Assembly (NCBI RefSeq): GCF_037042905.1
Contig: NC_087261.1
Location: 24,490,001-24,554,000 of the forward strand
Direction: 5' to 3'
DNA length: 64,000 bases
Origin: Lytechinus pictus
Taxonomy: Eukaryota
Positions within the stretch are counted from its first letter, which is position 1; each line of letters starts with the position of its first letter. The translations under genes and the position numbers were made by a program. Of the stretch, positions 3,165 to 33,520 are shown piece by piece. Under the pieces are notes generated by a model. That model had not been told where the DNA came from. It searched no databases and worked only from the letters and a program-made list of their open reading frames with translations.

Positions 3165-4092
3165 TCATGATATTACGTATTTATCATACATTGCATTGGA
3201 GTACGAATTCTTTTTAAAGTCCTGAATTTTCTTTCTTTTAGGAGCCACTTTGGGCTTCATTCCATTGTGTTTTGGTTGTACTTTCCTGTGACCAACGACG
3301 TATGTATCAGCTGCACCTCGTCCACCCTCATTGACGCGTTCATTCGCCGTTTCGTCCACCCGTTCGTTGTTGCCTTCTGAGGTCATTACCTCATAGAGAG
3401 TTTCAATGGTTTGGACTTGTCGACCAGTCTTTTCGTCTGATGAATGATTATTTATAAGATTGACATACGTGTGTTTCTTCAGATCTAACTCATTGTCATT
3501 CGTTACGGCGCCCGGCGGCATTCGAGGTTCGTTCCCTTTTGAGGTTTTAGTCGCGCTTGCGCCCATCGGGAGGTATGTATGGTAGGTGTTTGCGTCCCTC
3601 GCCTTTCGATTATTTTCGATTTTGGTCATATAAAGTGGTTTATTGGCCAAAACATTCAGATCGACGTCAGGCTCGGCTACGGAAGCCTCCTCGAGGTTGG
3701 CGTAGTCATTCACCGATTCGCTGATCGACGTGGCGTAGTCATGTTCAATCTGGCAGTACCCGACGGTGTCGTGTCGCGTCGGGTTCTCAGTGGCAACGGT
3801 GTAGTGATGGTGAGATAAGCCGGGTGATGGTGGGTTACCCGTCGGCATGGCTTGGCCGACTGCGTCGTAATCATCCTCGTCACCGTTGTCGAGCTCGAGG
3901 TAACCAGAATCCGATCCATTAGGAACATCGGCCAGACTACCGCTAGAGACCTGTACCATTAGGATGCCGAGTGACGGTGAGTCTGGGGGTCTACCACGGG
4001 TATGAGCAGGGGAACGGATATCTTCTGTGTCTGGTGTGGTATACAGATGAGAAAGAACTTCGCGCCCTGACTCCATAGGTTTCTTTCTGCGT
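3165..4092 (-). CDS. Gene A exon 7: entire cytoplasmic tail with tyrosine motifs
   Basis: Acceptor TTTTTCAG gives an RRRKK stop-transfer sequence; 308 aa, apparently disordered, with YLEL, YDAV, YCQI, YANL, YLPM, YVNL, YEVM. Confidence 0.9.
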
Positions 4093-7000
4093 CTGAAAAA
4101 AAAATCAACCATAAAATTGAAGAACGAATAAATCAAAACAAATTTCTTGTTCGATTGACGGATTATAAAATAAGTCACCAAAATAAAACAAACATAAAAT
4201 GGAAAAGTCAAAATAAGCTGCCCATTGCAATGGCAGTCCGTGGAGTTTGTCATTGAACATTATTCCCTGGCTGGGCAGCTAGTTTCGCCAATATTCGTCA
4301 GCCAAGGTTCTTAAAATAGATGTCGGTACCATCGAGATGTTTGCCAGAAACCCCCATCAAATACCCCAGTCAGCTCATGGATGTCTGCGAAAGGTACTAG
4401 GGAGCTTTTGCTTCCAAGACGCACGACGTATTCACAAACATAGAAAATGTATTGTCAAACGCTCTTCATGACAATGAACAACCAAGAAGTCTTTGTCGAA
4501 AATTGGTGAATCAACACAGCAGTTTAATAATAATAATAATAATCCGCATTTATATAGCGCTTAACACATCGGAACGACGTCTCTAAGCGCTTTACAGATA
4601 TATTATTACCCCGGTCATCGGATCCTTGCATGCCCGCATACAATGTATGCACCTTCTCCACTCCCTGGGGAGCATTCCAACAAGAGTTCCAAGACTCAAT
4701 TGCTAGGCATACTACATAGGCTTTCGCATCCTACCGGGTACCCATTTAACACCTGGGTGGAGAGTGGCAAATTGTGGATTGACGCCTTGCCAAAGGACGC
4801 TAGGCCATGGTGGGATTCGAACACACGACTCTCTGATTACAAGGCGAGAGTCAGAACCGCTACACCACGGCGTTTCGTCCTGGACTCTTGACAAACGACA
4901 TATGTGCAATTTTTTGTCAGCTCCGAAACTGCTGTTCCGGTTCACCAATTTTCGACAAAGACCTCCAAGCTGTTCATTGTAATTAATCGGGTATTTTCAA
5001 TATATTTGCTGTGTTTTTTGATATTAAAGTTGAGGGTAATGGCATCTATTTTGTCCAATCTTAACCCACCCCTCAGTCAGACATGTGCGCAAATGTTTAT
5101 AACAAATATATCAGTGGATCGGCGTTATTAAAACCAAGAAGATATTGGGGCAACTAGCAAATTTGAAACACAAAACTTTGATACCCACTTCTGATCGGCC
5201 AAATATCAAGAGTATTTTTTTCTTCGGCATCAAACGCGTTCAAAAGTAAAGATTCGATCACTGGTCCAGAACGCATATATTGTACATTATTAGAATTTCT
5301 GTCGCTGAAACAAAATGACAATTCAGATTTTGTTCACTTTGTCCATTCTCGGTGTTTTCTTTTAAACTTACTTAATAGTACGAATAGGGGGGGGGGGTCC
5401 TACAAAGTTGAATTTCAATCTGAATATGTATATCACTCAGAATTTGTTCTATCACCAGCAGTAGCATAATTAGTCACAATTTTGAGGGAGCCAATAGTGG
5501 CATAGGGGGCAAACATTTCTAATAAGCTGCGAGCGCGCAAAAGTGTTGGCCTGGGGTCCGTTGCAGAAAGAGTTGCGTTTAAACGCAAGTCAAAATATCA
5601 ATCGCAAGTCCCAAATGCGCGCTGTTGATTGGTTAAAAATCAAGTTGCGCATGATTTTTGAAGTTGCGTTTGATTGCAACTTTTTCTGCAACGGGCCCCT
5701 GGTCTTGTTAATACATACATTCAAATATTGCAATGTGTTTTTTACATAAAATTTAGAAAATGAAAGCATATTTCATTATTGTCCTTTTCTTTATTTTTTA
5801 ACATGAAATTTAGACAATGAAAGCATATTTCATTCTTTTCCTTTCCTTTATTTTTTTTCTTGACATTGAAAATTTTGAGGTTCCATGCCCCAGCCTCCCC
5901 CCCCCCCCACCCACTCCTTCATCTGCACGCCAGTAATCACCAGACTGATAACATACCTCCGAACACAGTAACAGGAAATGGTCAGCGTTGAAACCAGGAT
6001 AAGCAAGACTGCGACACCGATACCAGAGAGCATCGGGATCATGAATCCATCTGAGATGAATCAAAATTNNNNNNNNNNNNNNNNNNNNNNNNNNNNNNNN
6101 NNNNNNNNNNNNNNNNNNNNNNNNNNNNNNNNNNNNNNNNNNNNNNNNNNNNNNNNNNNNNNNNNNNNNNNNNNNNNNNNNNNNNNNNNNNNNNNNNNNN
6201 NNNNNNNNNNAGGGTAACCACTTAAGTTCCGAAAAATGTTCTCCCAGCGGGCCCTGCTATTATTATTGGGCCAAGCTAGGCTTCCTATTCAGGTGCACAC
6301 AACTTTTTGAGGAATTACTTCCTGCCAGTACCCATTTACCTCACCTGGGTCGAGCGCAGCACACTGTGGATGAATTCATCATAGATGACATTGGCAAAAG
6401 TAAAATATAACTTGCATACTAGAAGGCATAGGATGTTGATTCGTCTGTTGTTTTCGATAGATATTTGACTCAGGCATCATGTGGGTGGGGTGGGGGGCTA
6501 AAGAGAACTTTAAATTTGTGATACCACCTCATAGGTACGCTCGAGAGTTGATGGACGTTTTCCTCCTCTACCTTGGTTATATTGCGGAGGTGTTTACTGA
6601 CATAATCAATACTCCAATTTCTGGTTTCGGCCGATTCTTTCTTCAAGTATCTCTTTATGTCTCTTAATTTTTTAAGGGTAGACCTAATAATGGCATAGGC
6701 CTATAAACAGTTAATTAACATCATCGTGTGAGGCGTGGGGATTATGGGCCTACATAATATAATTTCTTCACGATCTTTTTGTAGAACAGGTTGTTTCTAT
6801 AGGGGCGATTCCATGCTAGAAAAATCAGCCATTTTCACAACATTTTTCAACCTGCTGTCCAAACAAACGAAGAACTTTAATTTGCTTTGTGGTGATATTA
6901 AAGTACTACTGGGTAGACATGCAAGAAACTGACAACGAACAAAAATATGTTGTCCGTATAGGTGAATTAGAGCTTAAAATGTTGCGTGTCGTACGGGACA

Positions 7001-10000
7001 TTTCTGCGTCCCTTACGACACACAACATTTTCACCTATAATTTACCCATAATCATTTGTTTGTGTTGGTTATTAGTTTTTCACATGACTACCCACTATAG
7101 CTTTAGTATTGAAAAAAAAAGAGAATATTTCATTGCTCAAGCATTCGGCTATAGGAAACTAAAAGTTGTCAAATATCCCGTACGACACGTATGGAATCGC
7201 CCAAACATTAAAGCTTCTCTTTTGTAAAACGATACATGTAATGAATTTGCAATAAAACTGTTTGCATACAGGTTTAATTCAGAGTAGATGAATATACAAA
7301 GGGACTTTACTTGAATCATTGTTATCCGTAGATGATCCGTCTGTGTCGGGAAAACTCTCAGAAGATTCTAACTTCGGAATAGGGGTGACTATGTTCTCTG
7401 AAAAGACAAATGAAAAAAAATAGTAATGTATACAGGAGAAAGAAAAAAAAATCGCACACGTGTGTTACGCTATTCATAGAACAATTAGGCCTACACAGCA
7501 TAGCTCAGCATTAAAACGGCTTTTTTTAACATAATAATTAAAGCTATTTATTCACTGTTCCTTTTTCATTACATCGGAATGGGCATTTCTAGCAGTTCTG
7601 ACAGGTATATAGGCCTGTATTTTTGGCCAGTGTGTTCAGAATGATTAGTTTCATTGGTTTTAATGATTTTTTAAATGCCCAAATGGGACATTTGTTTCTG
7701 TGTTTCTGACAGAATAACCAAGTGATCGCGAAACTCACCTCTTTCAATGGCACTAACTCGAAACCAAAAGCCTTGGTACTCCACGCTGTAATCGGATTCG
7801 AACCGAATCGTAACCGATTCGTTCACCGGATATTCGACAGAAAACCCTCGCGGAGCCAAACTCCCGGTTAAAACTAGGACATCGTCTTTCGCTGAGGTAG
7901 TGCCGATTTCAACAATGTCGTGCTTGGATTCAAGATGAGAGGAGATGACGTCGACGCGAATCGATTTGTTGATTGGTGGATTCAGATACCACGTGATGTT
8001 TTGATGCTCTGGATAAGGGGAGGGGTAATTTTCCGACGCGATGTTGATTGGGGAGGTGATATTAATTTGTTGTTCTCCGAGTTCTACCTGAAATTCTGAA
8101 AAAAGGAGAAGAAAAGATAAAGAGGGCAATTGATTGTTAGTAATTTTGTTTTTCACAAGAACAATGAGATCAACTATTTGAAATTATTAGTAATGACATC
8201 TCTTCTCGAAAAACGGGACCAGCTTCTAACGTGAATGCCTCGTTATTATATTGACTATTCGCTCTACATTATGCCCATTTTTCGGCTTATGGTTTCTGTA
8301 AAGAAAAATGTATAAATTGTAAAAACACCAATTATAATAAAAGTAATTTTTTAACACATACCTTCAAATTGGTCCGGTCCTGCAATTATATCGATCAGAA
8401 AACCGCGGAATGCTTTTGAATTATCGGTCTGAAACCTCAACCAAATTTTGTTATAACCGGGTACGATTAGGTCCGTCGGCAAATCGGTTTTGTTGTAATG
8501 ACTCGTGATAAATGCCAAATGGTTTCTTCGGTCACTGTAATCCGATCCTACTCCAATGGTGATCTTATCGTATCGGTTTTCAATATTTATATCCTTGAAC
8601 CGGAAAGTAACCGATTGCTGGGAGGGCGCTGAAATTCTCCAGATGATATCGGCGTAATTCGGATAGTCGTGAGGATATCCGGGCGATGAAATTTCGGCAG
8701 TTTGGGTGTCCGAAAGGACGACATCTCTCTCATGATGAATAGCTGAAACAGAATCAGGAAAATTACGACTTTCAGGGTTTTATACTTCCGGCATTTTTTA
8801 TTTCTTATGTTCTTCTTCATTAATATCAAACCATTTACTGTGAAACAAGCCTATAAATGTCCGTTTAAATGAAATAAGTTAGAGCATTTTGATTATGAAA
8901 TGAACAAATTTGCAGATATTCATGTTAGGATCTCCTGAATTAATAGATAGAAGGGACTAACGTGCTCGACTTTATTTTAACGATTATGAGCAGTTTTACA
9001 AGTATAAGGAGCAATGGCGGTAATTTGGATGAAATAGGTAAGGAACTCAACGGGGACTTCACGAGGACGTGCATTGGGGACAGAAAAGTCCGTATGCTTT
9101 TATGGGTGAAGAAAAGGGTTATCGTTGGCAAGAACTAACGTCATTAGACTCCGAAGAATACATAACAAGCAAATTTATAAATACTTTGAGATGCAATGCC
9201 AGGTGTAAATTTCATAAGGTCAGAATTTATACATAATTTATATATTTTTGAAGAGGTGTTGTGGCTCAGTTGATAAGTCTCCGGAGTCCGGACCTTTCAA
9301 GATCCGGGGTTCAAATCCAACCTCACATTTTGCCACTCTCCACCCAGGTGTAGTAAATGGGTACCAGGTAGGAAGGAATTCCTTGAATGCTCGAGCGTCC
9401 GATCAGGATAGCCGTGCTCAGGGGCGGAAATCTCTCCCAAAAGGTAGGGGGGACACAGGGGCGGATCCAGCCTTCGCCAATAGGGGGGGGGGGCGGAAAT
9501 TTGTTTCAGCCATATTTTCTCCGATCGGCAGCTCGAAGATGATTTGTGTTTGTTTCTTTGAAGGGGTAGTCCTCATTAGTCACTTCTTAGCTTTATTCTT
9601 ATAAATTCATAAATAATATCATAATCCTTATTATATGATGCGACCGCGAAGCACGAGCTATTTTTTTGGAAATGTTATGTATTTTTACCCAAAATTTGAA
9701 CATTCTGGGCAATGTTTGTTATCCTGAAAAAATGAGTATGCAACTTAATAATTACTACGAACGCAAAGCGCGAGCAGAAATGAACTGATGAAAAAGATAC
9801 CTGTTAAAGACTGCGTGCAGTTAGCATTTAACAATCAAATAATGCGAGCGCGAGCTGAATTTTTTTTAACATTTTCACCTAAAGAATGGAAATTCTAAGC
9901 ACTTTTTGTAACTCAAGCAGAATAGGTATATAAGTAGACAATTGATGCGAGCGCGAAGCGCGAGCGGAATATTTCGAGATTTAGTCCTATAATATTTACT

Positions 10001-13000
10001 GAACGAGACACTCTTGACTATTCATGTTTTGTAAATCATAAAAAGGATGAGTATTAATAATGCGCGCGCAAAGCGCGAGCAGAAAATTTTTATATACGTT
10101 TTGAACTGGTACCTGTTGAAAAGGTACCTGTTAAGGACTGCTTGCACTTAGCCATGAAGGCGTAACATATTTCAACAATCAAAAAATGCGAGCGCGAAGC
10201 GCGAGCTGAAAATTTTTGAAAATTTCTAAAGAAAGAATGGAAATTTTTAATCAATTTTTGTAATCGTGAACAGGATAGCTATATAATTCAACAATTGATG
10301 CGAGCGCGAAGCGCGAGCAGAAAATAAATCGAGATTTAGACCTAAAAATGGGCCACTCTGTTCATGTTTTTTAAACAGCCATAGGCTGATCGAGGGCTTT
10401 TTACCGTGTTTAAATGAATAAATCAATCAAAATCAATGTTTTGTAAATCATGAAAAGGATGAGTAATAGGGGGTCTTCCTACATTAATAATGCGAGCACA
10501 AAGCGCGAGCAGAAAAATTTTGATTTTGATTTTGATTTTGTGATCTGAAACTGGATAATGATTTAAATAGAGAACAAGTTTAGTATTTGAATGAACATGC
10601 GCGCGTGTTTCATATTAAGACATAAACTTTCATATATTCCGATCTGAAAAAAAGAGTCAATTACAGCTTTATATTTCAAGCACTTTGTAGGAAAATTGTA
10701 AGGTGGATATGGATCTCACTTTAAAAAAAGAGCTAAAATTTTCATTATTATTACTTTGAGTTTTGACATAGGAACGGGACATCCTTACGACATGTAGTCA
10801 TCATATGATGACTATCTTCCTATTCCTCTTGCTAAGCGCGAGATGAAACAAAAGGGATAATTTAATTATTAAATTAATATCATATTTATTAATGCCTAAT
10901 GAGGGCGCGAAATCTGATGATATTATGGCATAAAAACTGGACATTTCACTTTTGTAAATATGAATAGGATGCATCAGTTAATATATTTTTAACCATTAAT
11001 GCGAGCGCTAATCGCGAGCTAAATTTTTTGATAAATTGTCATGAAAAGGAGATTTTAAGTAGTTTGTTGTATAATCAATATTGAAACATACATAACTCGC
11101 CAATCAAAATGACAGCGTGCAGCGCTAGCTGATACGTCTTGACAATCAGACCTGAAATGGGATATTTTGAAAACTTTATGGAATACACGAAAATAATACG
11201 TACCTGATAAATGAAAATTTGGAAGCGCGCAGTGCAAGCAGCAAATGTTGATAAAATTAAACTGATATTTTTACAAAGCACTTTTAAAAAATAAATTTGT
11301 AAATTACAAACAATAATGAAAGTTCGATTTCCGAGGTGAAATATGTTTTGTATATTGACTTCCAAACTTGATATTTGAGCTCCATATTGAATTGGATATT
11401 GGATCCGCCTATGGGGACAAGGGGCGGGAATATTTGACAAGCAAAAAAAGGTTATCATCCCAAAAGTACGGTCATCTCGTCCCAAAATACATGTTTTATT
11501 TCGATTTAGAATGATGTATTTCTTACCATCATAGAAGACAAAAAATAGTAGGGGGGACATTTGATATTGTGTCCCCCCTACTATTTTGAGTAGGGGGGAC
11601 ACGTCCCCCCTGTCCCCCCTGGGATTTACGCCCATGACGGTAATAGTATGCAGCGCTTAGAAACATTTGTGTTAAGCGCTATATAAATGTTGCATGTTAT
11701 TACTATTAACATTATTAAAATTATTAATATTATCATTATACAAAAATTAGAGTATGATTTCGAAAAGCTAAAATATTCGCTCGCTTCGACTGCTCGCGAC
11801 TTTTTTTATAGAAAATTTGACCCGCTTTCATCGTCATTTTTTAAAATGTTTTGTGTGGCCGTAATTACGCCATGATTTCAATGTAAAATGCAACTATAAA
11901 CATGATCATTCCAATCGCTATAGGCAGGCTTATATTGCTTTGGCCTACAGAATGCTGATCTCATCAAATCTACAATATTTGTTGCAATCTGATTGGTTGT
12001 TGTTTCTTCCATTAAATCGTTCAAGGAGAAACAACAAACAATCGGTCAAGGTGTGTATGGGTATCTTATCAGTGTAATGACTGTATTCCACCTGTCTGTG
12101 GTGGTAGGCAAGCACTGTTTTAATGCAAACTTATTATGGGACAGTCACACCCCCGAACCGACTGCAAACCGAACGATAGTATGTCATTGGTATTAACGTA
12201 ATAGCTCTGGTCGGTCTGGAGTCCGTTTCGCAGGTGCGACAGTATCTTGACTCATAGGTCTCTGTCACACGAAGTGAATCGATGTATCACATCCATGGCT
12301 CTGAGAAGCGGGGTGCTGCGTGTGTTATACACCACAGGCAGCACCCCATGGAAATCGTGTTAGTATGCTAAAAAGTAGAAATTTAACCAAAATCACCTTA
12401 ATTTTGTCACATTCTTCTTCCAAACCAGCACCTTCTATCCCCCCCCAAAAAAAAAAAAAAAAAAATCGTTCTCTGGGTCCTCAGCACATCAATTAGAAAC
12501 CAATCATAAGATCACAGAATACCGAATGAATTCGAGGCCTTTATCAATTTCAAGCTCTAAGCTTCGGATGGAGGTCTCCCACATTTCAAAATGTATTATG
12601 TCGACATATGTATATATAAATTTATCTGCTATTTCTTTAATGATATTAAAAAGAACAAAATTTATTAGGTATAAATATATTTCAATTAGATTGTTAGAAT
12701 TTCTTTTTTCACATGTTATTCATTATGTCATTTGCTTATTGCTATGTTATGCTGAGAAAAAGTTACACTTGTATATACTTTAGTTATTGGAATGTGGAAA
12801 TAAATAAATCAAATCAAATCAAATATAAATCGGTTTCGATCGGAATTAATAGTTCAATTACTTCACAATGTGACCGGGTATTTAGCGGTGCATCTTCCTG
12901 CTATTAAGCTACACATGGTTTCCTGTGTGAATAGTGCTGCAACCGAACGATAATAATAAAAGAGTTTAATGTGAGTTCACAATTTCCAGGTAGTGACAAA

Positions 13001-24759: not shown

Positions 24760-26926
24760 CTATCTTGGACACACATCGTCAACACTGATGTACTCATGGA
24801 TATCGTCATCTTCATCGCTGCTGTCGCCACTGATTGCACTGTAAATCCCTTCCCCGTTAGTCAGATCGTCTCCACTTCCCTCCAGACCTATTGATGAATA
24901 TACCCCTGACGTTGTTGAAAGACGATTCTTTGAAGATAGTTTATCCAACGTGGCGCCCCCTGTAGGTTGGCTAGGACCAACATCGACTTTTCCAATGGAA
25001 CTTGCTGTCTCCTGGCTGTTTCTGGTGCCTGATGATTTTGAAAGATGATGCAGCTTATGTAGTTTCTTGTCACCAGAACGTTTGTTTCCCGCAGTATGTT
25101 CTAATCCCATCTGAGTGGGGACGTCCTGGAATTCGTCCAAAATGTCAATGTATAGATTGCCTAGGTTTGTTTCAGTCGTTGCATCTGCGCCGTTTTCCAT
25201 GTCCAGTTCATCGTAATCATTTTCGTCGGTTTGGGGTCTCTGGATAGTGGCACTTGCCATTTTATCGGAGCGCCTCGCGGGAGAAACAAGCTGGAAACTC
25301 CCAACAGTCGTAAGCTCCCTCCCGAGGACCACGTCAACGGTAGGACGTATCTGGACACTCTTCCTATTCATTTCGTACTGTGTACTAGGTAGAGGAGGCG
25401 AGGTGATTTCATCTGCAGGAGTCCATCCGGATGTTAGGTTTTCCAAGGACGCAGGCCGACTAAGAGGTTGGTATGTCTGTTCGGTACTGTCTATCTCATT
25501 GTATTCACCATCATCTTTCATATCCCCATTAACAAGATGGGAACTTCTGGATTCCTTTTCCATAACTGGCCTTACTTGCGTTTGGTTCTTCCTAAGCGTT
25601 TCATACTGCGATTGTTGTGGCGCCTGTGTATTTTCTTTTTTAGGATTAGAAGTTTGTGGTGAATCCACCATAGATGCAGGTCTACTGAGTGGTTGGTAAA
25701 TGGATTTTTCTTCTGTTTCATCTTCCTCAATAAAAGCATCTGAGACAAACGAACGAAGTCCATCTCTATATCCAGGTGATGTTTTCGTCAAGGATTCTGA
25801 GCTTTTACGAAGGTTATTCCACAACTGGACGCCGACTGCATTCAGGTTAGGATTACTTTTGGCGAGGCGCTTGTCCAGTACTTCTATATTCCGCGAAGCC
25901 TGGGGAGTGGCCAATAAACTTGTGGATCTCAATGCAGTGTAATGCCCCGACAGCTTGCGAGGTTGATCACTCGTATTTGCCCGACGACGCTGCTCTGGTA
26001 GTGAATGCACAATGTCAACAATCTCCCAACCTTCACCGTCAGAAAGTATTAATGAGCCTACAGGAGATATGACTCCAGGAGACTGACTTTCCAGAACAAA
26101 ATATTCCTGCTGTGTTAAGTCTGCAGAAGAAATAGTCCCAGGGGGCCCTCTTTCCAAAACATAATACCCAGGCTGTTCATTGTTATTCAGGATATTTGGG
26201 GCCACGTGTGCTTTTGACGCAGTAGACCTTAGAGGCTGGTACGTAGGGCCAATACCAGGATTTGATTGGCCACAGTTAGCGTTTCTGATATCGGTTTCCA
26301 TAAATATAGGTATCGAGCCCACACTTCTAGCTCCTTTTAGCTTCATGTTCATTGGATTTACACCGAATTTACCTATTGCATACTTCCGAACCGGCATCTG
26401 AGGTCTTGAGACAGTGTTTGGCTTTTGTGCAGGTGTGACAAAAGCATGGCGAACGCGTGGGATGTCAGCCGTGTTTGCTCTGGAGCGTTGCCCAGCACTC
26501 GCATGATGGGAACCACTCCCATCGAGACTACCCGCACCGAGTGACCTCTGCGACTTAGAAACTGGGTGTAGCATGTTATCAATCATGTTCGTAAGTTCAC
26601 AGAACTCGACATCAAGTTCGGCGCTCAAGGTCCTCTTGCTTCCGTCACAACTGGCGGTAGACCCGCTCCTCTTGCTGTTCCCGCGTGGGTTCTTGGATAT
26701 TTCCTGGTACACATGCGGTCCGGGGGTACCAAACAACAGATTGTACTCGCCTTCTCCTATCTCGTAATAGTGGTTCTTTAGACCCGGTTCCATTGGTCCT
26801 GTTTGTGCAAGAGCAGGTGATACTTGATGTGTGGTCAGGTTCATGTCTCGTTTCTCGTGATTCATAGGATTGTTGCACATCCCCAAAGGCGGTCGGGTGT
26901 CGGAGGTCGAGGCGTTCGCCGTAGAT
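24760..26926 (-). CDS. Gene B exon 5: entire cytoplasmic tail
   Basis: 2167-nt exon inside the 726-aa ORF; acceptor CCATGCAG at 26927; 16 Yxx[LIV] motifs. Confidence 0.92.
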
Positions 26927-29900
26927 CTGCATGGATACAATTGTCAAATTTGATTATGAAAACATTTTAGAAATGTAAAAATATGAATGATATAAAAGTT
27001 ATAAAAATGCATCCTATTTTCAACTCAATGTTTATACCACACGATTGTTTTAAAGTTTGCAACGTCTAGAAAGAGTAACCTTTTTTTATCATTTTCACTG
27101 TTGTTAAGAGGTAAAAGGTCGCGGGAAAGGAGGAAAACGGTCTCCGAAAGGGATTTTGTTCTTCTTCCTCATCTTCTTCATTTGTCCTGTTTCATGTTGT
27201 TGTTCTTTGTTAGAAAATGTCTTATTTGTCCGCTAGCATCTTTTACACCGGAAGTATTGGTGCACTACAACAAATTTTGTTGGTTTCAGTGAGAGCTGAA
27301 TGAGGATGTTTGCGTATACTGTTACAGAAACACTTTCTAGCAATGACTTAGGGACTACGAGGAAAGGCTAGATAAGGTATGTGTTCTATGTTAGCTGAGT
27401 CCCGAAGTCAAATCCGTTTCCGTTATTCATAAATACAATTCTGTTAAACCATATAGCTATGCGATTTAAGTAAAAAGGGCATTATTTACCTCTTCTTTTT
27501 GTGATAGGCGCACACCACCGCCACTCCTAGGCCAAACGCGACCAGAGTCAGCCCAACTGCTAATGGGATTGAAACTCCAAGGCGTCTCCGGGTAGCTGAT
27601 GAAGACAAGAAACAAGAAAAGGGTGACATCATTTAGGATAACACGTCAGTAAATAGTGATAGACGATAGCTTTATATTACGTATTGGTTATTTGATGAGG
27701 ACAAAATGTTAACAGGATGAAAGATGGCAATGGTTATCATGGTAGTGATTCCGTTGCTGATGCTGCTGATGATGACGATTATGGTGATTCTTTTCTGATG
27801 TAATACTGGAATGAATTATGCAAGGTATCGTAAAAAAGTGCCATTGTGGTGATAAAAATTTTACAATAGAACAGGGTGCGTCGTGCAATGTAAATCTGAA
27901 TACACGACAAAGAGCACGGTTCCCTTACATGGAAGATACCCTTGTGGTACCTCGGTCATCTAATTGTATCTACAGTGATTGGTAAAGGTGTTGAGCGGCC
28001 AATCAAAAGCATTGCATGAACGTTACCATCGGATGGTCAAGTTACTATAAAAGAAACTTTGATACAACGGGACCCAAGGGGTGGTCTAGTGGTAGGCTAT
28101 AAATTTGAATATTGTAAGGGACCGATAACTCTTTAAAATGCACGTATGATTGAGTGGATACAGCTATGCCAGGAAAGTGGTTCCATATCCGATAGTCTTT
28201 GGGAAGAAGGAGTTCTGCTGACTTTGGTCATCATGGCAGAGCAGAGCATGGTCATTCCTTGCAAGACATGCTGCTAGGTCACTGCATGTGGGAAAGGCAT
28301 CATGACCAGTCCAAAATGGGATGCTGGTGATCGGAGAACATTGGTAGATGGGTAGCCGATGGTGCAATAAGTTCCATGCATGTGCAGATAAAAGAAGTGA
28401 AGTTATAGACCACCTGTAGTCATGATGATAGTGGTAATAATGATTATGAATTGCTGAAGCTGGTTAAAATGGTGATGAACATGATGTAATTTACATGCAT
28501 AATTCCAACTAGGAAGTGTTTCATGAAAAGTCATGTCAGTGATTTTCCCCGGCAAAGTAAATTGCTCTTAGCCAATCAGATCCAAGGATTTGCAGTAGAT
28601 TTTACTGTGGAAATCACTGACCAAACTTTTCATGAAACACTCACAGAAATAATAACGTGCACTTGCAGCCTGCTGTCACTTGTTTAAAAAACATTCCTCA
28701 TTATAAGAGGAACCGGGTCGTGTGGTCCAGTGGTTAGAGCATTGGACTTATAATCGCAAGGTTGTGAGTTCGAATCCCAACTCTGCCATTGTCTCCACTT
28801 TGATAAAAAGGCCAGAGAGTGATATCTGTCGTCTATAACGTCAGCCACTATGACTGATTAACCTAGACGTAAAATGTTTCCTAGGTAATTGGTTATATAC
28901 CAGCTTGGCGTTTACCAGCAAAAATGCTGTCCTGCCGAGTTCCTACGGGAGTTACCATAAACAGAAACAAACAGAAATAAACAGAAACAGGAAGTATAAG
29001 GGATGATATACAGACATGATAGAGAGCGACGAAAGGGGGCGCATCATTAATTGCATTCGAAACAAAGGTATATGGATACTCACTTGGTTCAAGAGACACT
29101 AACGGAAGATCCATAAAGTCTGTAGCCACAGGTGACTTAAAGTCCATTATTGGAGTAATGTCTGGTAAGTCGGTGGGATCTGAAGGTTAAAGAATAATTT
29201 GTTTGCCATTCATTGAAAATGTTGGCATTGTAAACATACGGTGTAAATAAATGTAAGACTACAAAGACAAGGGGGAAAGGCCAGTGTGACCTGCCACTCC
29301 AAAACCAGCAAGAAGTGGCCCAAAGTGAGTTTTAATTTTTTAAGATACCTTGACAGTGATGTGGCTGCAAGCGCGGAATATTGTATCGTTCTGCATCATC
29401 ACACTTGGAAATGATGTTTGCTTCTCTGCACTCCCCACAATCTTCTAAATTCAATTCCTCCTTCCCAAATAACAACTGAAGAGTCCCGAAACAAATACAA
29501 AATCCCTAAAGCGAAATTTTACAGATGTGCAGTTATTAATCATACGATTTTAGTGTCATTTTTTCTATAATGGCTCATTACCTGATGGGATGCGTATGAC
29601 TTCCTTGGCAGACCTTCCGACCACATTACGAATAACCTACCCCTATATATTAACATGTGTAAAACCACATTGGAAGATCTCCGAGTTACGTAGGTCCACG
29701 AAAAAATGAAACAAAGGTACGAATTTAAATTTTGTACGGTCTGGGCATTATCAAATAATGGGGTCCCCAGACATGTAAGAGGGAGAGGGACACACTCCCG
29801 CGCGTACTTTTCATGGAAGGGGAAAGAGAATAGAAAAGGAACCAGCGTTATAAAAAATTAAAAGGTACAACATTCAGTTGTCACGGTTTCTAGAATGTTT

Positions 29901-32243
29901 TATTTGGGGAAGGGTGACAATTCATTCTTGCCTCGGGCAGAATTTTTCAGAGCTTCTACACCCAGACTTCACCATGTCTACAGCAATACTCACCTGGATC
30001 GACAGCAACTGTCAGCCATATTCCCCTGTCGGTGACATTGTCGATGTCCGAAGAAAATGTCACCCACACCAACTCGTTCGTGGCGAACGAAAACGTGCTA
30101 TTGACCACACGCTCGAGATCGTCATCTGCCTCGTACATTTGGGTCTTGGCCTTGTGTTGTCCGAATCTGAAGGTGTCCCCTGTTGCCAGCTCTAGGTCGT
30201 TGACGGTTAGCGACAGACCGCATCCAGAGGGCGCTTGAAATGTCCAAAGGAGGTTGACGTCTTGGGGGTAGTTTGATGGATAACCTGGAGTTGTGATGTC
30301 GATTGGGGTTGTGTTCTTGTCGAGGACATAGGTGCAGTAGGGTACTGGTATTTTGGAAAACGAAACAATAACGTTGTGAAACTATTAAATATTAAGAAAA
30401 ATCCAAATGAATGATATCGTTTTTTGTTTTTATTTCTACTGCGTGTGTATATCTACATAGGCTAGTATTTTCTGAAAGAAGGAGCGATGCCAGGGCATTA
30501 TATAAAGGGAGCAGGAAGGCACACTCAAATGTATTAAGATAAATAGGTCTCGTACGGTAAGAAAACCAAGTCTTACCTTCGCCATATACCTACTATGTGG
30601 AATTTACCTTAATTTATTATTTCACCCCCTTTCTTTTTCATCCTTCCAATTACACATCTCCTCCTCTGTTTAGGCCGACAGCTCTGGGGAATAATTATTA
30701 GACCATATTATATACCGTATGGTAGCTTAGTAAGAAAGTGGTCTAATGACAAAATTATTTCCCAAACTGTGGCCCGTATTCTGAAGACCAGTTTATCTTG
30801 TGGCTCTGTCACATTGTTCCGTGCAAGCTTGTGTGTGACGTGACTTGCAGGTAACTAATTTACTACCCGCAGGTCGACCGCATTGACGGTATCTCGCACG
30901 CATCTCACACGCAGTTGCCTGCAGAAGCGCATTGCACGCAGAAAAGTTTTGAACATGCTCAAAACTTTGTTGTGGGCGAGTTGCAGGCAATCACTCGCAA
31001 CCCACCCGCAAGGCTTGTACGGAACGATGTGACAGGGCCTTTAGACAGGTCTATAACTCTGTGCTAAAATTATGGGAAGCCGAAAATGTAAAAAAACAAA
31101 TCTGTTCATAATTTATGTGTTTGAACTTTACTGTTTTCGTTTCCCCATCCATTAATGATGAAGAAAACTGTTTTTCATTCGCTCATTATTCCGAGAAAGT
31201 TATGAAAGATGTGTGCACAAAATGAGCAGATAATTAGACCTTTATTGTTAGAGGCTTGTGTCACAACTGGGTAGCCATAGTTGAACAACTTTAGACCAGA
31301 GTTTGAATTAAACTGGAACACAGACACTGCAAAAACACCGGTGTTAATTCAACACCATCCTGGTATCTGTATCGGTCCACACCAGAGAGGTGTTGAAACA
31401 ACAGTCGTTGGCGTTAGGCTAACACAAATTTGGCATTTAACTTAAGCAATTTAAGCAACACCAGTTAGTGTTAAACCAATGTCGGTTTGATTCTTAACTG
31501 GTGTTGTTTCAACACCTCACTGGTGTGGACCGATATAGATACCAGGTTGGTGTTGAATAAACACTACATAATAACTTCCACTATTTGTCACAATTTGTGG
31601 ACGCTTGTGAATAACAGGCACGAGACATCTAAAAAAATTATTTTTGGGATAGGATCATTCAATGGTACGTTATCGCAATGACCGCTCCGTTTGTAAACAA
31701 AAGGTGGACAGGAATAGATCACTTCCTTTGCCTCACGTACATCCGACCCGAATTGTTGACCGAAATGGAATGCTTAGGCTTTACCAATTCAAACATCTTT
31801 ATTCTTCCATTTTCATACAATTTCTTATACAACGGATATATATTATTATCAATAAATGCTTTATTCCTACTTTGTCCGTTCGTGCAACATTTCCATTAAC
31901 CCATTATTGGGATCATCATTAACATTACCATCGTAATCATCAGTAGTAGTAGTGGTGGTAGTAGAAGTAGTAGTAGTAGTAGAATGCCTAGTAGTAGGTA
32001 GTATAGTAATAGTAGTAGAAGAATAAATTGTTGTGGTGGTGGTGGTAACATTAGTGATGGTGTTTGNNNNNNNNNNNNNNNNNNNNNNNNNNNNNNNNNN
32101 NNNNNNNNNNNNNNNNNNNNNNNNNNNNNNNNNNNNNNNNNNNNNNNNNNNNNNNNNNNNNNNNNNNNNNNNNNNNNNNNNNNNNNNNNNNNNNNNNNNN
32201 NNNNNNNNNNNNNNNNNNNNNNNNGCAGCAGCAGCAGTAGTAA

Positions 32244-32300
<57 letters not shown>

Positions 32301-33520
32301 AAATAGTATAAGCAGCTGCCATGATAGGTGGTGGTGGTAGTAGCAGCAGAATCAGCAGCAGCAACTTTTACAAAAGTGTGTCGACATTGTCACTGCATAA
32401 TTATTAAACATCAATTTACATTGACTTTCCTTGAATATCTTATTACACACCAAATCTTACATGGAACTAGTTACCCTTCCTTCTTAGAAGGGCTCCGTTT
32501 GCGGGGACACGCTCGCTCGCTTTGTTCACTCTTGTAGATTTTAAAGAATAGTGCTCCATACCCAGTTGACTGTACTCAACAAACACACTGTCGGTCCATG
32601 TGCTCTTTCACACCAGTACCAATTAATAACATTAAATTTATGTGATTCGTTAGATGTGTACACGGAAATCCCATTGAATATAAAGGATTGCATTGCACAG
32701 CCCCATTGCAGATTTTGCGAGGAATAAAACCAAAGAGAAGTTTCTGATTATTCATGAACTATTCATGGAATTTAAGATAAAAGAAAGGGAGAGTTAAGCG
32801 TGATTGGCTCATTGAATTGTCAAATAATCTCGATGACTATTTTACAAAAAACAAAAGAAAATTCAAAACGTCGTAAAACGTTCTTTATTATAATTTTGAA
32901 AACCCTTTCGAAAAAAATATATAGAGTTAATTTTCCAAGACCTTATACTAGTTTGTCATAGTTTTTGTTATAGACCAATGGTTAAATGAGAAAAACATAT
33001 TTACTAGAAAAGTAGGCATGAGTTTTCATTAATCTTGAAAAAGGAAAACCTAATCATGTTTCACTTTACAAGATAACTTTGTGAAGGGTATGAATGCCAT
33101 AATGGATGCTGCATATAACACATGAAATTTCAATAGCATCATGGTAATTTCTTTAAATCATGTAAGCATAACTTACATGACTCATGTTTAGTTGCATAAA
33201 AGGTTTAGAAAATCACAGAATGCTCTCTCTCTCTCTATATATATATATACATATAAGAAAAACAAACGTATTCAATTAAAAACAAAATCCTGATCACTGA
33301 AGTAAGTCAGTGCTTGAAATAAGGCCAGGTCAAACATCACTGTGTTGTTTTATGTAAATATGATCATACCTATATATTTTTACACTATAACAAAATATAA
33401 TATATACTTACGGCAGTCTTTATCTGATGATGTCGCAGGCGGGAAAATACACAGTCCATATGTTATTAAAATCACGAGGCTTCCTGGATTATGAAGGAGA
33501 GTCATGTTGTCGTGCAGCAT
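24760..33520 (-). CDS. Gene B: type I membrane protein, signal peptide + 1 CUB + stalk + TM + 721-aa ITAM/ITIM-like tail (942 aa)
   Basis: Exons (minus): 33520-33412, 30344-29994, 29179-29084, 27595-27490, 26926-24760. All GT-AG, phases 1,1,1,2; total 2829 nt, open to the TAG at 24760. Confidence 0.88.
27490..27595 (-). CDS. Gene B exon 4: transmembrane helix (absent from the ORF track)
   Basis: TRRRLGVSIPLAVGLTLVAFGLGVAVVCAYHKKK; phase 1-2, acceptor TTCATCAG, donor GTAAAT. Confidence 0.88.
28160..28390 (-). pseudogene. LINE ORF2 C-terminal fragment
   Basis: NSFFPKTI followed by a frameshifted WNHFP, the SFFPRTIxxWNxLP motif typical of CR1/L2-group ORF2 ends. Confidence 0.5.
28715..28990 (+). 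mobile_element. tRNA-derived SINE (second family); diverged minus-strand copy at about 59655-59833
   Basis: A-box TGGTCCAGTGG, B-box GTTCGAATCC, (AAACAG)n tail. Confidence 0.88.
29084..29179 (-). CDS. Gene B exon 3: Pro/Thr/Asp stalk
   Basis: DPTDLPDITPIMDFKSPVATDFMDLPLVSLEP; 96 nt, phase 1-1, acceptor CCTTCAG, donor GTGAGT. Confidence 0.8.
29994..30344 (-). CDS. Gene B exon 2: CUB domain
   Basis: CTYVL..IDITTPGYPSNYPQDVNLLWTFQAPSGCGLSLTVNDLEL..GDTFRFG..LVWVTFSSDIDNVTDRGIWLTV; donor GTGAGT. Confidence 0.9.
30801..31040. mobile_element. MITE nested in an older element (about 30770-31320)
   Basis: TIR ggctctgtcacattgttccgtgcaagc / gcttgtacggaacgatgtgacagggcc. Confidence 0.78.
31326..31565. 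mobile_element. Palindromic MITE with CACT end; similar-ended elements at 34248-34412 and 55624-55842
   Basis: Long inverted arms ggtatctgtatcggtccacaccag / ctggtgtggaccgatatagatacc. Confidence 0.72.
31940..32345. repeat. (TAG)n microsatellite spanning an assembly gap
   Basis: Direct inspection; Ns at 32067-32224. Confidence 0.9.
33412..33520 (-). CDS. Gene B exon 1: signal peptide
   Basis: MLHDNMTLLHNPGSLVILITYGLCIFPPATSSDKDC, then strong donor C|GTAAGT (phase 1); alternative ATG at 33505. Confidence 0.7.

What the first reader, a model, noticed from the sequence alone, without database searches (positions are those of the whole stretch)
3165..33520. Tandem pair of CUB-domain receptors with immunoreceptor-like phosphotyrosine tails: candidate undescribed signalling-receptor family
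Seen: two head-to-tail minus-strand genes with the same exon plan (signal peptide, phase 1; one exon per CUB, 1-1; about 30-aa stalk, 1-1; TM exon, 1-2; the whole tail in one exon). Their tails carry no recognisable catalytic domain and 16 and 21 Tyr. Known: non-catalytic Tyr-phosphorylated immunoreceptors normally use Ig or C-type lectin ectodomains. CUB scaffolds such as CDCP1 and DCBLD1/2 have different ectodomain organisation. Inference: a lineage-specific duplicated family of CUB receptors/adaptors signalling through Syk, SHP, Grb2 and PI3K, possibly paired receptors in immunity, gamete recognition or allorecognition.
Basis: partly seen in the sequence, partly recalled or inferred. Interest (0 to 1): 0.85.

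Follow-up and report, generated by a model that had tools for sequence, protein, structure and literature searches.

The report
CUB receptors with tyrosine-motif tails
Two neighbouring sea urchin genes encode single-pass membrane proteins with CUB domains outside the cell and long unstructured tails whose tyrosines are unusually well conserved. They are probably unstudied docking receptors for tyrosine-kinase signalling, similar in kind to vertebrate CDCP1 and DCBLD1/2 but not members of those families.

Summary
The window is from Lytechinus pictus. Gene B (LOC129279872, 942 aa) and gene A (NCBI product of 750 aa) lie head to tail on the minus strand. Both follow the stated plan: signal peptide (phase 1), one 1-1 exon per CUB (one in B, three in A), a stalk of about 30 aa, a 1-2 TM exon, and the whole tail in one exon. 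The tails hold 21 and 16 Tyr. Both N gaps are intronic.

RNA contigs join B's CUB, stalk, TM and tail exons at exactly the model junctions. A's exon sizes are identical in L. variegatus.

The tails have no Pfam or PDB match and are predicted to be unstructured. In A, all 16 Tyr are kept in three echinoid lineages against 52% for other residues. In B, 16 of 21 are kept, and 16 of 21 carry L/I/V at +3. A keeps three YxN, two YxxM, one YxxP and one YDxV motif.

Limits: the two tails are unrelated, the ectodomains are about 25% identical, and the ITAM spacing in B is what chance gives. "Paired", immune and gamete roles are unsupported. Phosphorylation is inferred only.

The order B, A, then a third CUB gene is conserved in L. 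variegatus and S. purpuratus. Relatives were found in echinoids only.

This scan noted other Tyr-tailed receptor clusters (EMI, Tie-type) elsewhere in this genome, not these genes.

The parts
33412..33520 (-). Gene B exon 1: start codon and signal peptide, 109 nt, ends in phase 1.
   Evidence: Exact mapping of P0001. AF2 predicts a helix at residues 12-25.
32067..32224 (.). Assembly gap inside gene B intron 1 (33411-30345). It is not coding.
   Evidence: RNA contigs end exactly at 30344 and continue off the laid stretch.
29994..30344 (-). Gene B CUB exon, 351 nt, phase 1-1.
   Evidence: Pfam CUB at 25.8 bits. Mapping. RNA joint 29179|29994.
29084..29179 (-). Gene B stalk exon, 96 nt, phase 1-1.
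   Evidence: RNA joints on both sides.
27490..27595 (-). Gene B TM exon, 106 nt, phase 1-2. A basic stop-transfer sequence follows the membrane span.
   Evidence: Hydropathy peak of 2.46. AF2 helix at 195-220. RNA joints.
24760..26926 (-). Gene B tail exon: 721 aa plus the stop. It holds 21 Tyr, of which 16 have L/I/V at +3.
   Evidence: No Pfam or PDB match. pLDDT is about 25. Present in RNA contigs.
14892..14970 (-). Gene A exon 1: start codon and signal peptide, 79 nt, ends in phase 1.
   Evidence: NCBI CDS start at 14970. Donor ATG|GTACGT. Same size in L. variegatus.
13688..14014 (-). Gene A CUB1 exon, 327 nt, phase 1-1.
   Evidence: Pfam CUB at 22.2 bits.. AF2 predicts a beta sandwich.
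8362..8742 (-). Gene A CUB2 exon, 381 nt, phase 1-1.
   Evidence: Pfam CUB at 52.7 bits. PDB matches to cubilin and PCPE-1..
7739..8095 (-). Gene A CUB3 exon, 357 nt, phase 1-1. This is the CUB most like gene B's.
   Evidence: Pfam CUB at 32.9 bits. BLASTP to B gives 25% identity, E 4e-7..
7311..7397 (-). Gene A stalk exon, 87 nt, phase 1-1.
   Evidence: It is the one candidate in this intron that combines a strong acceptor (pyrimidine fraction 0.88) and a GTAAAG donor with the 87 nt needed to reach 750 aa. Same size in L. variegatus.
6069..6210 (.). Assembly gap inside gene A's stalk-TM intron. It ends 18 nt upstream of the TM exon.
   Evidence: The exon count and sizes equal those of the orthologue.
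5957..6050 (-). Gene A TM exon, 94 nt, phase 1-2.
   Evidence: Hydropathy peak of 2.43. AF2 helix at 421-442.
3165..4092 (-). Gene A tail exon: 308 aa plus the stop. It holds 16 Tyr, all conserved in three echinoid lineages.
   Evidence: pLDDT is about 24. RNA runs X2 and X22 hold 100% of its sampled words.

Best explanation
Both genes encode non-catalytic type I surface receptors or scaffolds.

**Proposed mechanism (inferred).** The glycosylated CUB ectodomain (three CUBs in A, one in B) binds an extracellular protein ligand or a cis partner. Clustering then lets membrane-associated Src-family kinases phosphorylate the conserved tyrosines of the disordered tail. The phosphotyrosines recruit SH2-domain effectors.
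- A's tail reads like a multi-docking adaptor. It has three YxN sites (Grb2 type), two YxxM sites (PI3K p85 type), one YxxP and one YDxV site (Crk/Nck type).
- B's tail is an array of acidic Yxx[L/I/V] sites (Src, SHP, Syk or PLC-gamma type), with a conserved PxxPxR motif next to one Tyr.

**Comparison.** In kind they resemble vertebrate CDCP1 and DCBLD1/2, which are CUB-bearing scaffolds phosphorylated by Src-family kinases. They are independent, echinoid-restricted genes.

**Shown here:** gene structure, transcription and splicing of B, topology features, lack of any known tail domain, and selective conservation of Tyr and their flanks.

**Inferred only:** phosphorylation, the kinases, the SH2 partners and the ligand.
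For: - **Architecture.** A signal peptide, N-glycosylation sequons mainly in the ectodomain (8 in 384 aa of A against 2 in its 308-aa tail; 3 in 158 aa of B against 5 in its 721-aa tail), one strong TM peak followed by a basic cluster, and Pfam CUB hits.
- **Fold.** AF2 gives three beta sandwiches, a TM helix and an unstructured tail for A, and the same plan for B. Foldseek hits are neuropilin, cubilin, PCPE-1, MASP and C1.
- **Tails have no known relative.** There is no Pfam or PDB match. phmmer of tail A against 1.84 billion representatives found only two echinoid proteins.
- **Tyr conservation, L. pictus against S. purpuratus.** In A, 16 of 16 Tyr are kept against 52% of other residues (Fisher p 3.9e-5). 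In B, 16 of 21 are kept against 51% (p 0.017). Positions -3 to +3 around Tyr are 66-68% identical against 46-47% elsewhere (p 9e-4 and 2e-5).
- **A third lineage.** The fragment P0006, 48-57% identical to the other tails, keeps all 16 Tyr of A.
- **Motifs.** In B, 16 of 21 Tyr have L/I/V at +3 against 17% expected from composition (P 3.9e-9). In A, three YxN, two YxxM, one YxxP and one YDxV motif are kept in L. pictus, L. variegatus and S. purpuratus.
- **Selection.** A's tail has dN/dS 0.44 and still loses no Tyr. A's ectodomain has 0.16, which fits a conserved ligand.
- **Transcripts.** RNA contigs join CUB, stalk, TM and tail of B. Both tails are present in RNA-run contigs, and run X2 holds both.
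[quoted passage not shown] DCBLD1/2 are phosphorylated by Fyn and Abl on YxxP sites that bind CRKL (PMC6029619).
Against: - There is no direct evidence of phosphorylation or of any SH2 partner.
- The tissue or stage of expression is unknown, because run identities are coded. Two deep RNA runs from 2026 show no reads on B's exons.
- Tyr is a generally well-conserved residue type, and only three lineages were available.
- B's tail has an ordinary Tyr content of 3%.
- YxxPhi is also the AP-2 endocytic sorting signal.
- B's two ITAM-spaced pairs are expected by chance, given the motif density.
- Acidic residues before Tyr are only weakly enriched (P about 0.1).
- B's tail also holds long conserved blocks without Tyr. 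Its function is therefore not only Tyr-based.
Confidence: 0.6

Rival explanations
1. They are endocytic or cargo receptors. The CUB ectodomain captures an extracellular ligand, as in cubilin. The Yxx-hydrophobic motifs serve as AP-2 (mu2) sorting signals rather than as phosphorylation sites.
For: - Cubilin is the best PDB sequence match for A's CUB2.
- 16 of 21 Tyr in B fit YxxPhi.
- A's ectodomain is under purifying selection, as expected for a fixed ligand.
Against: - One or two sorting signals suffice in known receptors. Sixteen conserved copies spread over 700 aa are not expected.
- A's conserved sites are mostly not YxxPhi. Only 5 of 16 have L/I/V at +3. The others are YxN, YxxM and YxxP, which are SH2-type codes.
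- No NPxY motif is present.
Confidence: 0.12
2. They are co-receptors or auxiliary subunits, like NETO1/2, neuropilin, or nematode SOL-1 and LEV-10. The CUB domains bind another membrane protein in cis, such as an ion channel or a receptor kinase. The tail mainly anchors scaffolds.
For: - Language-model neighbours of both proteins include NETO2, NETO1, DCBLD1 and CDCP1 clusters, with scores 0.86-0.89. These are leads only.
- Neuropilin and Neto2 are among the Foldseek hits.
Against: - There is no LDLa, MAM or discoidin domain.
- The known auxiliary subunits lack long arrays of conserved Tyr motifs (own knowledge).
- This reading is compatible with, rather than opposed to, a phosphotyrosine-scaffold role. 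DCBLD2 and CDCP1 are both co-receptors and scaffolds.
Confidence: 0.15
3. B and A form an immune-type pair of ITAM/ITIM receptors that signal through Syk and SHP in coelomocytes, or they act in allorecognition or gamete recognition.
For: - Two Yxx[LI]-x6-12-Yxx[LI] patterns in B are kept in L. variegatus and S. purpuratus. One has the canonical acidic lead and x6 spacing. A few [SIVL]xYxx[ILV] matches are also present.
- B's ectodomain evolves faster than A's. It is 55% identical between L. pictus and S. purpuratus, against 74% for A.
- Six of seven SNPs in B's CUB and stalk exons in RNA contigs change the amino acid.
Against: - ITAM spacing is what chance gives with 15 Yxx[LI] units: mean 2.15 pairs, P(>=2) = 0.67.
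- The ITIM matches are not conserved in position between species.
- The ectodomains are only about 25% identical and differ in CUB number, and the tails are unrelated. This is unlike paired receptors.
- A's ectodomain has dN/dS 0.16.
- There are no expression data for immune cells or gametes.
- Seven SNPs are too few to test for selection.
Confidence: 0.1

Closest known systems
CDCP1 (CUB domain-containing protein 1, vertebrates)
   Same: It is a type I membrane glycoprotein with CUB-type domains outside, no catalytic domain, and a tail whose Tyr are phosphorylated and bound by Src-family kinases and other partners (PMC3534080, PMC4395315). Language-model neighbours of both proteins include the CDCP1 cluster, which is a lead only.
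   Different: - The CDCP1-specific Pfam models are not met. CDCP1_CUB_6 matches only profile positions of about 10-52, the start shared by all CUBs, at 12.8-28.3 bits against a cut-off of 27. There are no hits to the other CDCP1 CUB models.
- No CDCP1 chain is among the top 50 Foldseek hits or among the PDB sequence hits.
- The tails are 308 and 721 aa and show no similarity to any known sequence.
- As far as I know, CDCP1 is restricted to vertebrates (own knowledge).
DCBLD1/DCBLD2 (ESDN)
   Same: They are neuropilin-like scaffolding receptors with a CUB domain. Multi-site Tyr phosphorylation of the tail by Fyn and Abl drives SH2-adaptor (CRKL) binding (PMC6029619, PMC8015000). This is the same principle as proposed here.
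   Different: DCBLD proteins carry LCCL and discoidin domains, which are absent here. Their code is repeated YxxP. A has a single YxxP and L. pictus B has none.
Transmembrane adaptor proteins (LAT, PAG, LIME1, SCIMP)
   Same: They have disordered tails with many conserved SH2-docking Tyr (YxN, YxxL and others) and no enzymatic domain. A's conserved YxN and YxxM set is functionally similar (family properties from own knowledge).
   Different: Those adaptors have almost no ectodomain and are palmitoylated. Here there are one to three CUB domains outside. There is no sequence relation: the atlas scores for B's tail are 0.70 or lower, which is noise level, and there is no Pfam hit.
NETO1/2, neuropilins, cubilin, PCPE-1 (CUB-array proteins)
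   Same: The ectodomains are ordinary CUB beta sandwiches, encoded one per phase 1-1 exon. These proteins are the best sequence and fold matches.
   Different: The sea urchin proteins have no LDLa, MAM, discoidin, EGF or NTR modules. A's CUBs are almost free of Cys, with one Cys in 384 ectodomain residues. Long arrays of conserved Tyr motifs are not known from the tails of those proteins (own knowledge).
ITAM receptors with non-Ig ectodomains (Draper/CED-1 type)
   Same: They are single-pass receptors without a kinase domain whose tail Yxx[LI] motifs recruit a Syk-type kinase (own knowledge).
   Different: Their ectodomains are EMI/EGF, not CUB. The ITAM spacing here is not above chance, and no homology was found.

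Membership tests
CUB domain superfamily (PF00431) | A sequence match to the CUB profile above the gathering score, and a beta-sandwich fold. | tested here: met
   A has three CUB stretches, with 97 bits for the orthologue P0005. B's CUB exon scores 25.8 bits and the whole protein 21.4-22.6 bits, against a cut-off of 21.4. AF2 gives beta sandwiches, and the Foldseek top hits are all CUB proteins.
CDCP1 | CDCP1-specific CUB-like domains (Pfam CUB_CDCP1_1, CUB_CDCP1_2, CDCP1_CUB_6) matched over their full length. | tested here: not met
   Only a partial match to CDCP1_CUB_6 (profile positions of about 6-52 of 115), at 12.8-28.3 bits against a cut-off of 27, lying under the generic CUB match. There are no hits to the other two models. 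No CDCP1 chain appears among the PDB or Foldseek hits.
CDCP1 | Tail Tyr phosphorylated by Src-family kinases, with recruitment of Src and PKC-delta. | not testable with these tools
   Only motif conservation is available.
DCBLD1/2 | CUB + LCCL + discoidin (F5/8 type C) ectodomain. | tested here: not met
   Pfam finds neither LCCL nor F5_F8_type_C in P0001, P0004, P0005 or P0007.
DCBLD1/2 | Repeated YxxP sites in the tail. | tested here: not met
   A has one YxxP and L. pictus B has none.
NETO1/2 | Two CUBs followed by an LDLa module. | tested here: not met
   No Ldl_recept_a hit.
ITAM-bearing immunoreceptors | A Yxx[LI]-x6-12-Yxx[LI] pair that is conserved and more frequent than chance. | tested here: inconclusive
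   Two pairs in B are kept in three species. A motif-block shuffle gives a mean of 2.15 pairs, with P(>=2) = 0.67. A has none.
ITAM-bearing immunoreceptors | Binding of the tandem SH2 domains of a Syk-family kinase after phosphorylation. | not testable with these tools
   This needs a binding assay.
Paired activating/inhibitory receptors | Neighbouring genes with closely similar ectodomains and tails of opposite sign. | tested here: not met
   The ectodomains are about 25% identical, with three CUBs against one. hhalign aligns only 39 columns, at 54% probability.
Single gene family made of A and B (tandem duplicates) | Homology beyond the generic CUB domain: stalk, TM and tail. | tested here: inconclusive
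   They share the same exon-phase plan, adjacency and a collinear CUB3-stalk-TM alignment (E 4e-7). The tails show no detectable similarity.

The most novel reading that the evidence does not exclude
Echinoids carry a conserved cluster of CUB-ectodomain receptors that have no kinase and feed directly into Src/Syk/PLC-gamma, Grb2 and PI3K signalling. Gene B would act as a true ITAM-type receptor with a CUB sensor, or as a surface receptor upstream of the Src-family kinase and PLC-gamma pathway. The membrane trigger of that pathway is still unknown in echinoderm eggs (PMC11593052). Together with the EMI-only and Tie-type Tyr-tailed receptor clusters noted elsewhere in this genome, this would point to a broad sea urchin repertoire of 'any ectodomain plus phosphotyrosine tail' receptors.
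Probability: 0.12. Interest if true: 0.75.

Novelty: new variant of a known kind. Interest (0 to 1): 0.45.

Why it matters
If the tails are real phosphotyrosine docking platforms, sea urchins couple CUB sensors to SH2 signalling through genes unrelated to vertebrate CDCP1 and DCBLD. That would be an independent invention of the same design. It would also supply two well-defined, conserved and untested receptors in a species (L. pictus) that is used for genetics.

The complete retention of A's 16 Tyr while half of the other tail residues changed gives a precise list of sites to mutate. The gain is mainly candidate genes and a clear test. It does not overturn any current view.

Tried and rejected
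- **Relatives of the B tail.** Word-indexed searches with the tail and with a profile of four orthologues found only Lytechinus and Strongylocentrotus proteins and their transcript fragments.
- **Relatives of the A tail.** phmmer against 1.84 billion representatives gave two echinoid hits only. A full-length search with P0005 added only the S. purpuratus orthologue.
- **Homology between the tails.** BLASTP and hhalign of the A family against the B family aligned nothing beyond the CUB.
- **CDCP1 membership.** Rejected on Pfam, PDB sequence and Foldseek results.
- **A hidden folded domain in the tails.** AF2 gives pLDDT of about 22-32 throughout. B has only two low-confidence helices.
- **Atlas search with B's tail.** Scores were 0.70 or lower, which is uninformative.
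- **ITAM as a defining feature.** Rejected as unproven after the motif-block shuffle.
- **More copies in the window.** tblastn with A and B finds none.
- **Literature.** No paper holds the LOC or XP ids, and none combines sea urchin, CUB domain and ITAM.
- **L. variegatus locus of gene B.** The look-up with isoform P0002 failed, because only the longest product is indexed. B's CUB exon could therefore not be given a dN/dS value.
- **tRNA-like Rfam hit at 28716-28788.** ARAGORN does not call it. I read it as a repeat, not a gene.

Full report
**Origin and gene models**

The tail ORF at 24763-26943 (minus strand) is 100% identical to [quoted passage not shown] (P0001, 942 aa). The contig is CM073242.1 of GCA_037042905.1. 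Mapping P0001 back to the window gives one unique solution with GT-AG introns:

| Gene B exon | Coordinates | Size | Phase |
|---|---|---|---|
| signal peptide | 33520-33412 | 109 nt | ends in 1 |
| CUB | 30344-29994 | 351 nt | 1-1 |
| stalk | 29179-29084 | 96 nt | 1-1 |
| TM | 27595-27490 | 106 nt | 1-2 |
| tail | 26926-24760 | 2167 nt | from 2 |

The same look-up shows a downstream gene on the same strand with a 750-aa CUB product whose CDS starts at window 14970. I rebuilt it from splice signals and phases:

| Gene A exon | Coordinates | Size |
|---|---|---|
| signal peptide | 14970-14892 | 79 nt |
| CUB1 | 14014-13688 | 327 nt |
| CUB2 | 8742-8362 | 381 nt |
| CUB3 | 8095-7739 | 357 nt |
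| stalk | 7397-7311 | 87 nt |
| TM | 6050-5957 | 94 nt |
| tail | 4092-3165 | 928 nt |

The total is 2253 nt, exactly 750 codons plus the stop. The L. variegatus orthologue (P0005, LOC121430918, 750 aa) splices on its own locus with the same seven exon sizes, and the two CDSs align without any indel.

**Assembly gaps**

Gap 6069-6210 lies in A's stalk-TM intron. It ends 18 nt before the acceptor of the TM exon. Gap 32067-32224 lies in B's first intron. No coding exon can be hidden in the first gap, because exon number, sizes and total length equal those of the orthologue. I did not try to fill either gap.

**Transcripts**

Contigs of two RNA runs of the same species were laid on 24700-30400. 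One 821-nt contig in X1 joins the CUB, stalk, TM and tail exons at 29994|29179, 29084|27595 and 27490|26926. X2 shows the same joints. Contigs that cover the CUB exon stop exactly at 30344 and continue off the laid stretch, as expected for the splice to exon 1.

X2 also carries intronic contigs at 27737-28410 and a minor joint 28410|29081, so there are other isoforms or unspliced RNA. Two deep runs from 2026 show no reads on B's exons in the roughly 6% of reads sampled.

A's tail is fully present in contigs of RNA runs X2 and X22 of the same study as X1, and X2 holds both genes. A's junctions were not seen directly.

**Protein features**

- **CUB domains.** Pfam finds CUB in all four proposed CUB exons and nothing else above threshold.
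- **PDB sequence matches.** These are cubilin, PCPE-1, neuropilin-2, MASP and C1s, all through the CUBs. Neither tail matches anything.
- **AF2 model of A.** The alignment is shallow and confidence modest. It gives three beta sandwiches, a TM helix at 421-442, and a tail with pLDDT of about 22-29 and almost no secondary structure (one three-residue helical turn).
- **AF2 model of B.** It gives one beta sandwich, a TM helix at 195-220, and a tail with only two low-confidence helices.
- **Foldseek.** The search against the PDB returns neuropilins, cubilin, PCPE-1, enteropeptidase, MASP, C1r/s and Neto2. No CDCP1 chain is in the top 50.
- **Topology.** Each protein has one strong hydropathy peak followed by a basic cluster. 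A has 8 N-glycosylation sequons in its ectodomain and B has 3.
- **Cysteines.** A's 384-residue ectodomain has a single Cys, so its CUBs lack the usual disulfides.

**Are the tyrosines special?**

Orthologues were found in L. variegatus (P0005, P0002) and in S. purpuratus (P0007/P0022 = LOC576610/LOC587543, and P0004 = LOC105439665). Two further transcript-derived sequences were found. P0006 is an A tail from a third lineage, 48-57% identical to the others. P0003 is a B tail 89% identical to the S. purpuratus protein.

The comparison of L. pictus with S. purpuratus gives the following:

| Measure | Gene A | Gene B |
|---|---|---|
| Tail Tyr kept | 16 of 16 | 16 of 21 |
| Other tail residues kept | 52% | 51% |
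| Fisher p | 3.9e-5 | 0.017 |
| Identity at -3 to +3 around Tyr | 66% | 68% |
| Identity elsewhere in the tail | 46% | 47% |
| p for flanks against elsewhere | 9e-4 | 2e-5 |

It is not met, so the idea survives its own test.

**Motifs**

A keeps, in L. pictus, L. variegatus and S. purpuratus:
- three YxN sites (YAN, YVN, Y[SE]N);
- two YxxM sites (YLPM, YE[VA]M);
- one YxxP site (YTTP);
- one YDAV site.

By established SH2 specificities these are Grb2-type, PI3K p85-type and Crk/Nck-type sites. That assignment is my own knowledge and is an inference.

In B, 16 of 21 Tyr have L, I or V at +3, against 17% expected from composition (P 3.9e-9). B has two Yxx[LI]-x6-12-Yxx[LI] pairs that are kept in all three species.

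When the 15 Yxx[LI] units are kept as blocks and shuffled within the tail, a mean of 2.15 such pairs arise, with P(>=2) = 0.67. The ITAM label therefore adds nothing beyond the density of Yxx[LI] sites. Matches to the ITIM pattern shift between species.

B's tail also has long conserved blocks without Tyr, and a conserved PxxPxR motif next to one Tyr.

**Relation between A and B**

BLASTP aligns A's CUB3-stalk-TM collinearly with B's CUB-stalk-TM at 25% identity, E 4e-7 for a one-sequence search. Nothing in the tails aligns. Profile-profile comparison aligns only 39 columns at the start of a CUB, at 54% probability.

The two genes share adjacency, strand and exon-phase plan. Phase 1-1 CUB exons are, however, the general rule for CUB genes (own knowledge). 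They may be very old duplicates, but this is not shown. They are not "paired receptors" in the immunological sense.

**Synteny and a third gene**

In L. variegatus the order is B (942-aa product), then A (750 aa), then a third CUB gene about 5 kb downstream. That gene has a 1114-aa product and at least three one-exon CUBs that are 27-34% identical to A's.

In S. purpuratus, B's tail exon lies 7.8 kb upstream of A. CUB exons of one or two further gene models follow downstream.

The cluster therefore predates the split of Lytechinus and Strongylocentrotus. In L. pictus the third gene would lie beyond the low end of the window. Whether it has a TM segment and a Tyr-rich tail is unknown.

**Selection**

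| Comparison (L. pictus against L. variegatus) | dN/dS |
|---|---|
| A, three CUBs | 0.16 |
| A, CUB3 alone | 0.06 |
| A, tail | 0.44 |
| B, last 426 tail codons | 0.36 |

A's ectodomain is thus under clear purifying selection. This argues against a fast-evolving recognition role for A.

B's ectodomain is less conserved than A's: 55% identity between L. pictus and S. purpuratus, against 74% for A. Among 27 differences between the reference and the RNA contigs, 19 change the amino acid, including 6 of 7 in the CUB and stalk exons. The number is too small for a test, and contigs drop rare variants.

**What is known**

No paper in the library holds any of the LOC or XP identifiers. None combines sea urchin, CUB domain and ITAM. 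The nine papers that combine sea urchin, CUB domain, transmembrane and tyrosine phosphorylation are, by title and abstract, on other subjects.

The closest known kinds are CDCP1, which is phosphorylated and bound by Src-family kinases (PMC3534080, PMC4395315), and DCBLD1/2, whose YxxP sites are phosphorylated by Fyn and Abl and bind CRKL (PMC6029619).

Membership of either family fails. The CDCP1-specific Pfam models are not matched beyond the generic start of a CUB. LCCL and discoidin domains are absent.

Language-model neighbours of both proteins are a molluscan CUB cluster, NETO2, DCBLD1 and CDCP1, with scores 0.86-0.93. This fits the architecture but is a lead only.

**Verdict**

It remains untested biochemically.

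- a young duplicated family;
- paired receptors;
- ITAM/ITIM immune signalling;
- allorecognition or gamete recognition.

I class the finding as a new variant of a known kind (CUB-bearing phosphotyrosine scaffold). It is restricted to echinoids as far as the searches reach, and is of moderate interest.

Notes of this scan report other Tyr-tailed receptor clusters (EMI-only, Tie-type) on other pieces of this genome. I did not test them, but they suggest a wider theme.

Noticed in passing
L002:24344-29362 (L. variegatus) and L003:19126-26114 (S. purpuratus). In L. pictus this would lie beyond the low end of the window.: A third CUB gene lies directly downstream of gene A on the same strand. Its product is 1114 aa in L. 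variegatus. In S. purpuratus it is split into a 300-aa model and an 1178-aa model, the latter with a reverse-transcriptase hit. It has one CUB per exon, 27-34% identical to A's CUBs. Its C-terminal part was not seen, so a TM segment and tail are unknown.
   Followed up: partly
L003:1-2187: The current S. purpuratus RefSeq model of gene B's orthologue (XP_030839465.1, 176 aa) ends after the stalk exon. An intact tail exon, 91% identical to the older 963-aa model, lies 7.8 kb upstream of gene A and belongs to no called gene. Either the annotation is truncated or a secreted isoform exists.
   Followed up: partly
window 29994-30344 (gene B CUB exon): L. variegatus isoform X2 (P0002, 825 aa) skips the phase 1-1 CUB exon in frame. 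This gives a receptor with a stalk, TM segment and tail but no CUB domain.
   Followed up: no
window 27737-28410 and joint 28410|29081: Run X2 has contigs inside gene B's stalk-TM intron and a minor alternative joint. This points to intron retention or an alternative exon.
   Followed up: no
window 28700-29000 (+), inside gene B's stalk-TM intron: A marginal Rfam tRNA match at 28716-28788 (30.5 bits against 29) is not called by ARAGORN. Its depth in all four RNA runs is hundreds to thousands of times that of the gene's exons, with many variant letters and loose ends. It looks like an expressed, multi-copy tRNA-derived SINE.
   Followed up: partly
window 39971 to about 61100 (-): The upstream neighbour on the same strand has a 1504-aa product with Ig-type exons and Pfam hits to Mucin2_WxxW, Laminin_G_3 and F5/8 type C. 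It has no similarity to genes A or B by tblastn.
   Followed up: no
window 20375-21332, 31870-32390 and 45260-45900: These are long low-complexity, microsatellite-like tracts that give spurious Tyr-, Leu- and Thr-rich ORFs. Two of them (31870-32390 and 45260-45900) adjoin or span assembly gaps. They lie in the A-B intergenic region and in introns.
   Followed up: no
gene A ectodomain (window 7739-14014, exons): The three CUB domains of A contain only one Cys in 384 residues, so the usual CUB disulfides are absent. CUB2, CUB3 and B's CUB keep acidic residues at the positions of the E, D and D that bind calcium in C1s-type CUBs, by my own reading, but the loop between the first two is shortened. 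Calcium binding is therefore uncertain.
   Followed up: partly
gene A tail, window about 3210-3240: An invariant basic block (KPKVAPKRK) near the C-terminus is kept in all four sequences. It looks like a nuclear-localisation or lipid-binding patch. Its function is unknown.
   Followed up: no
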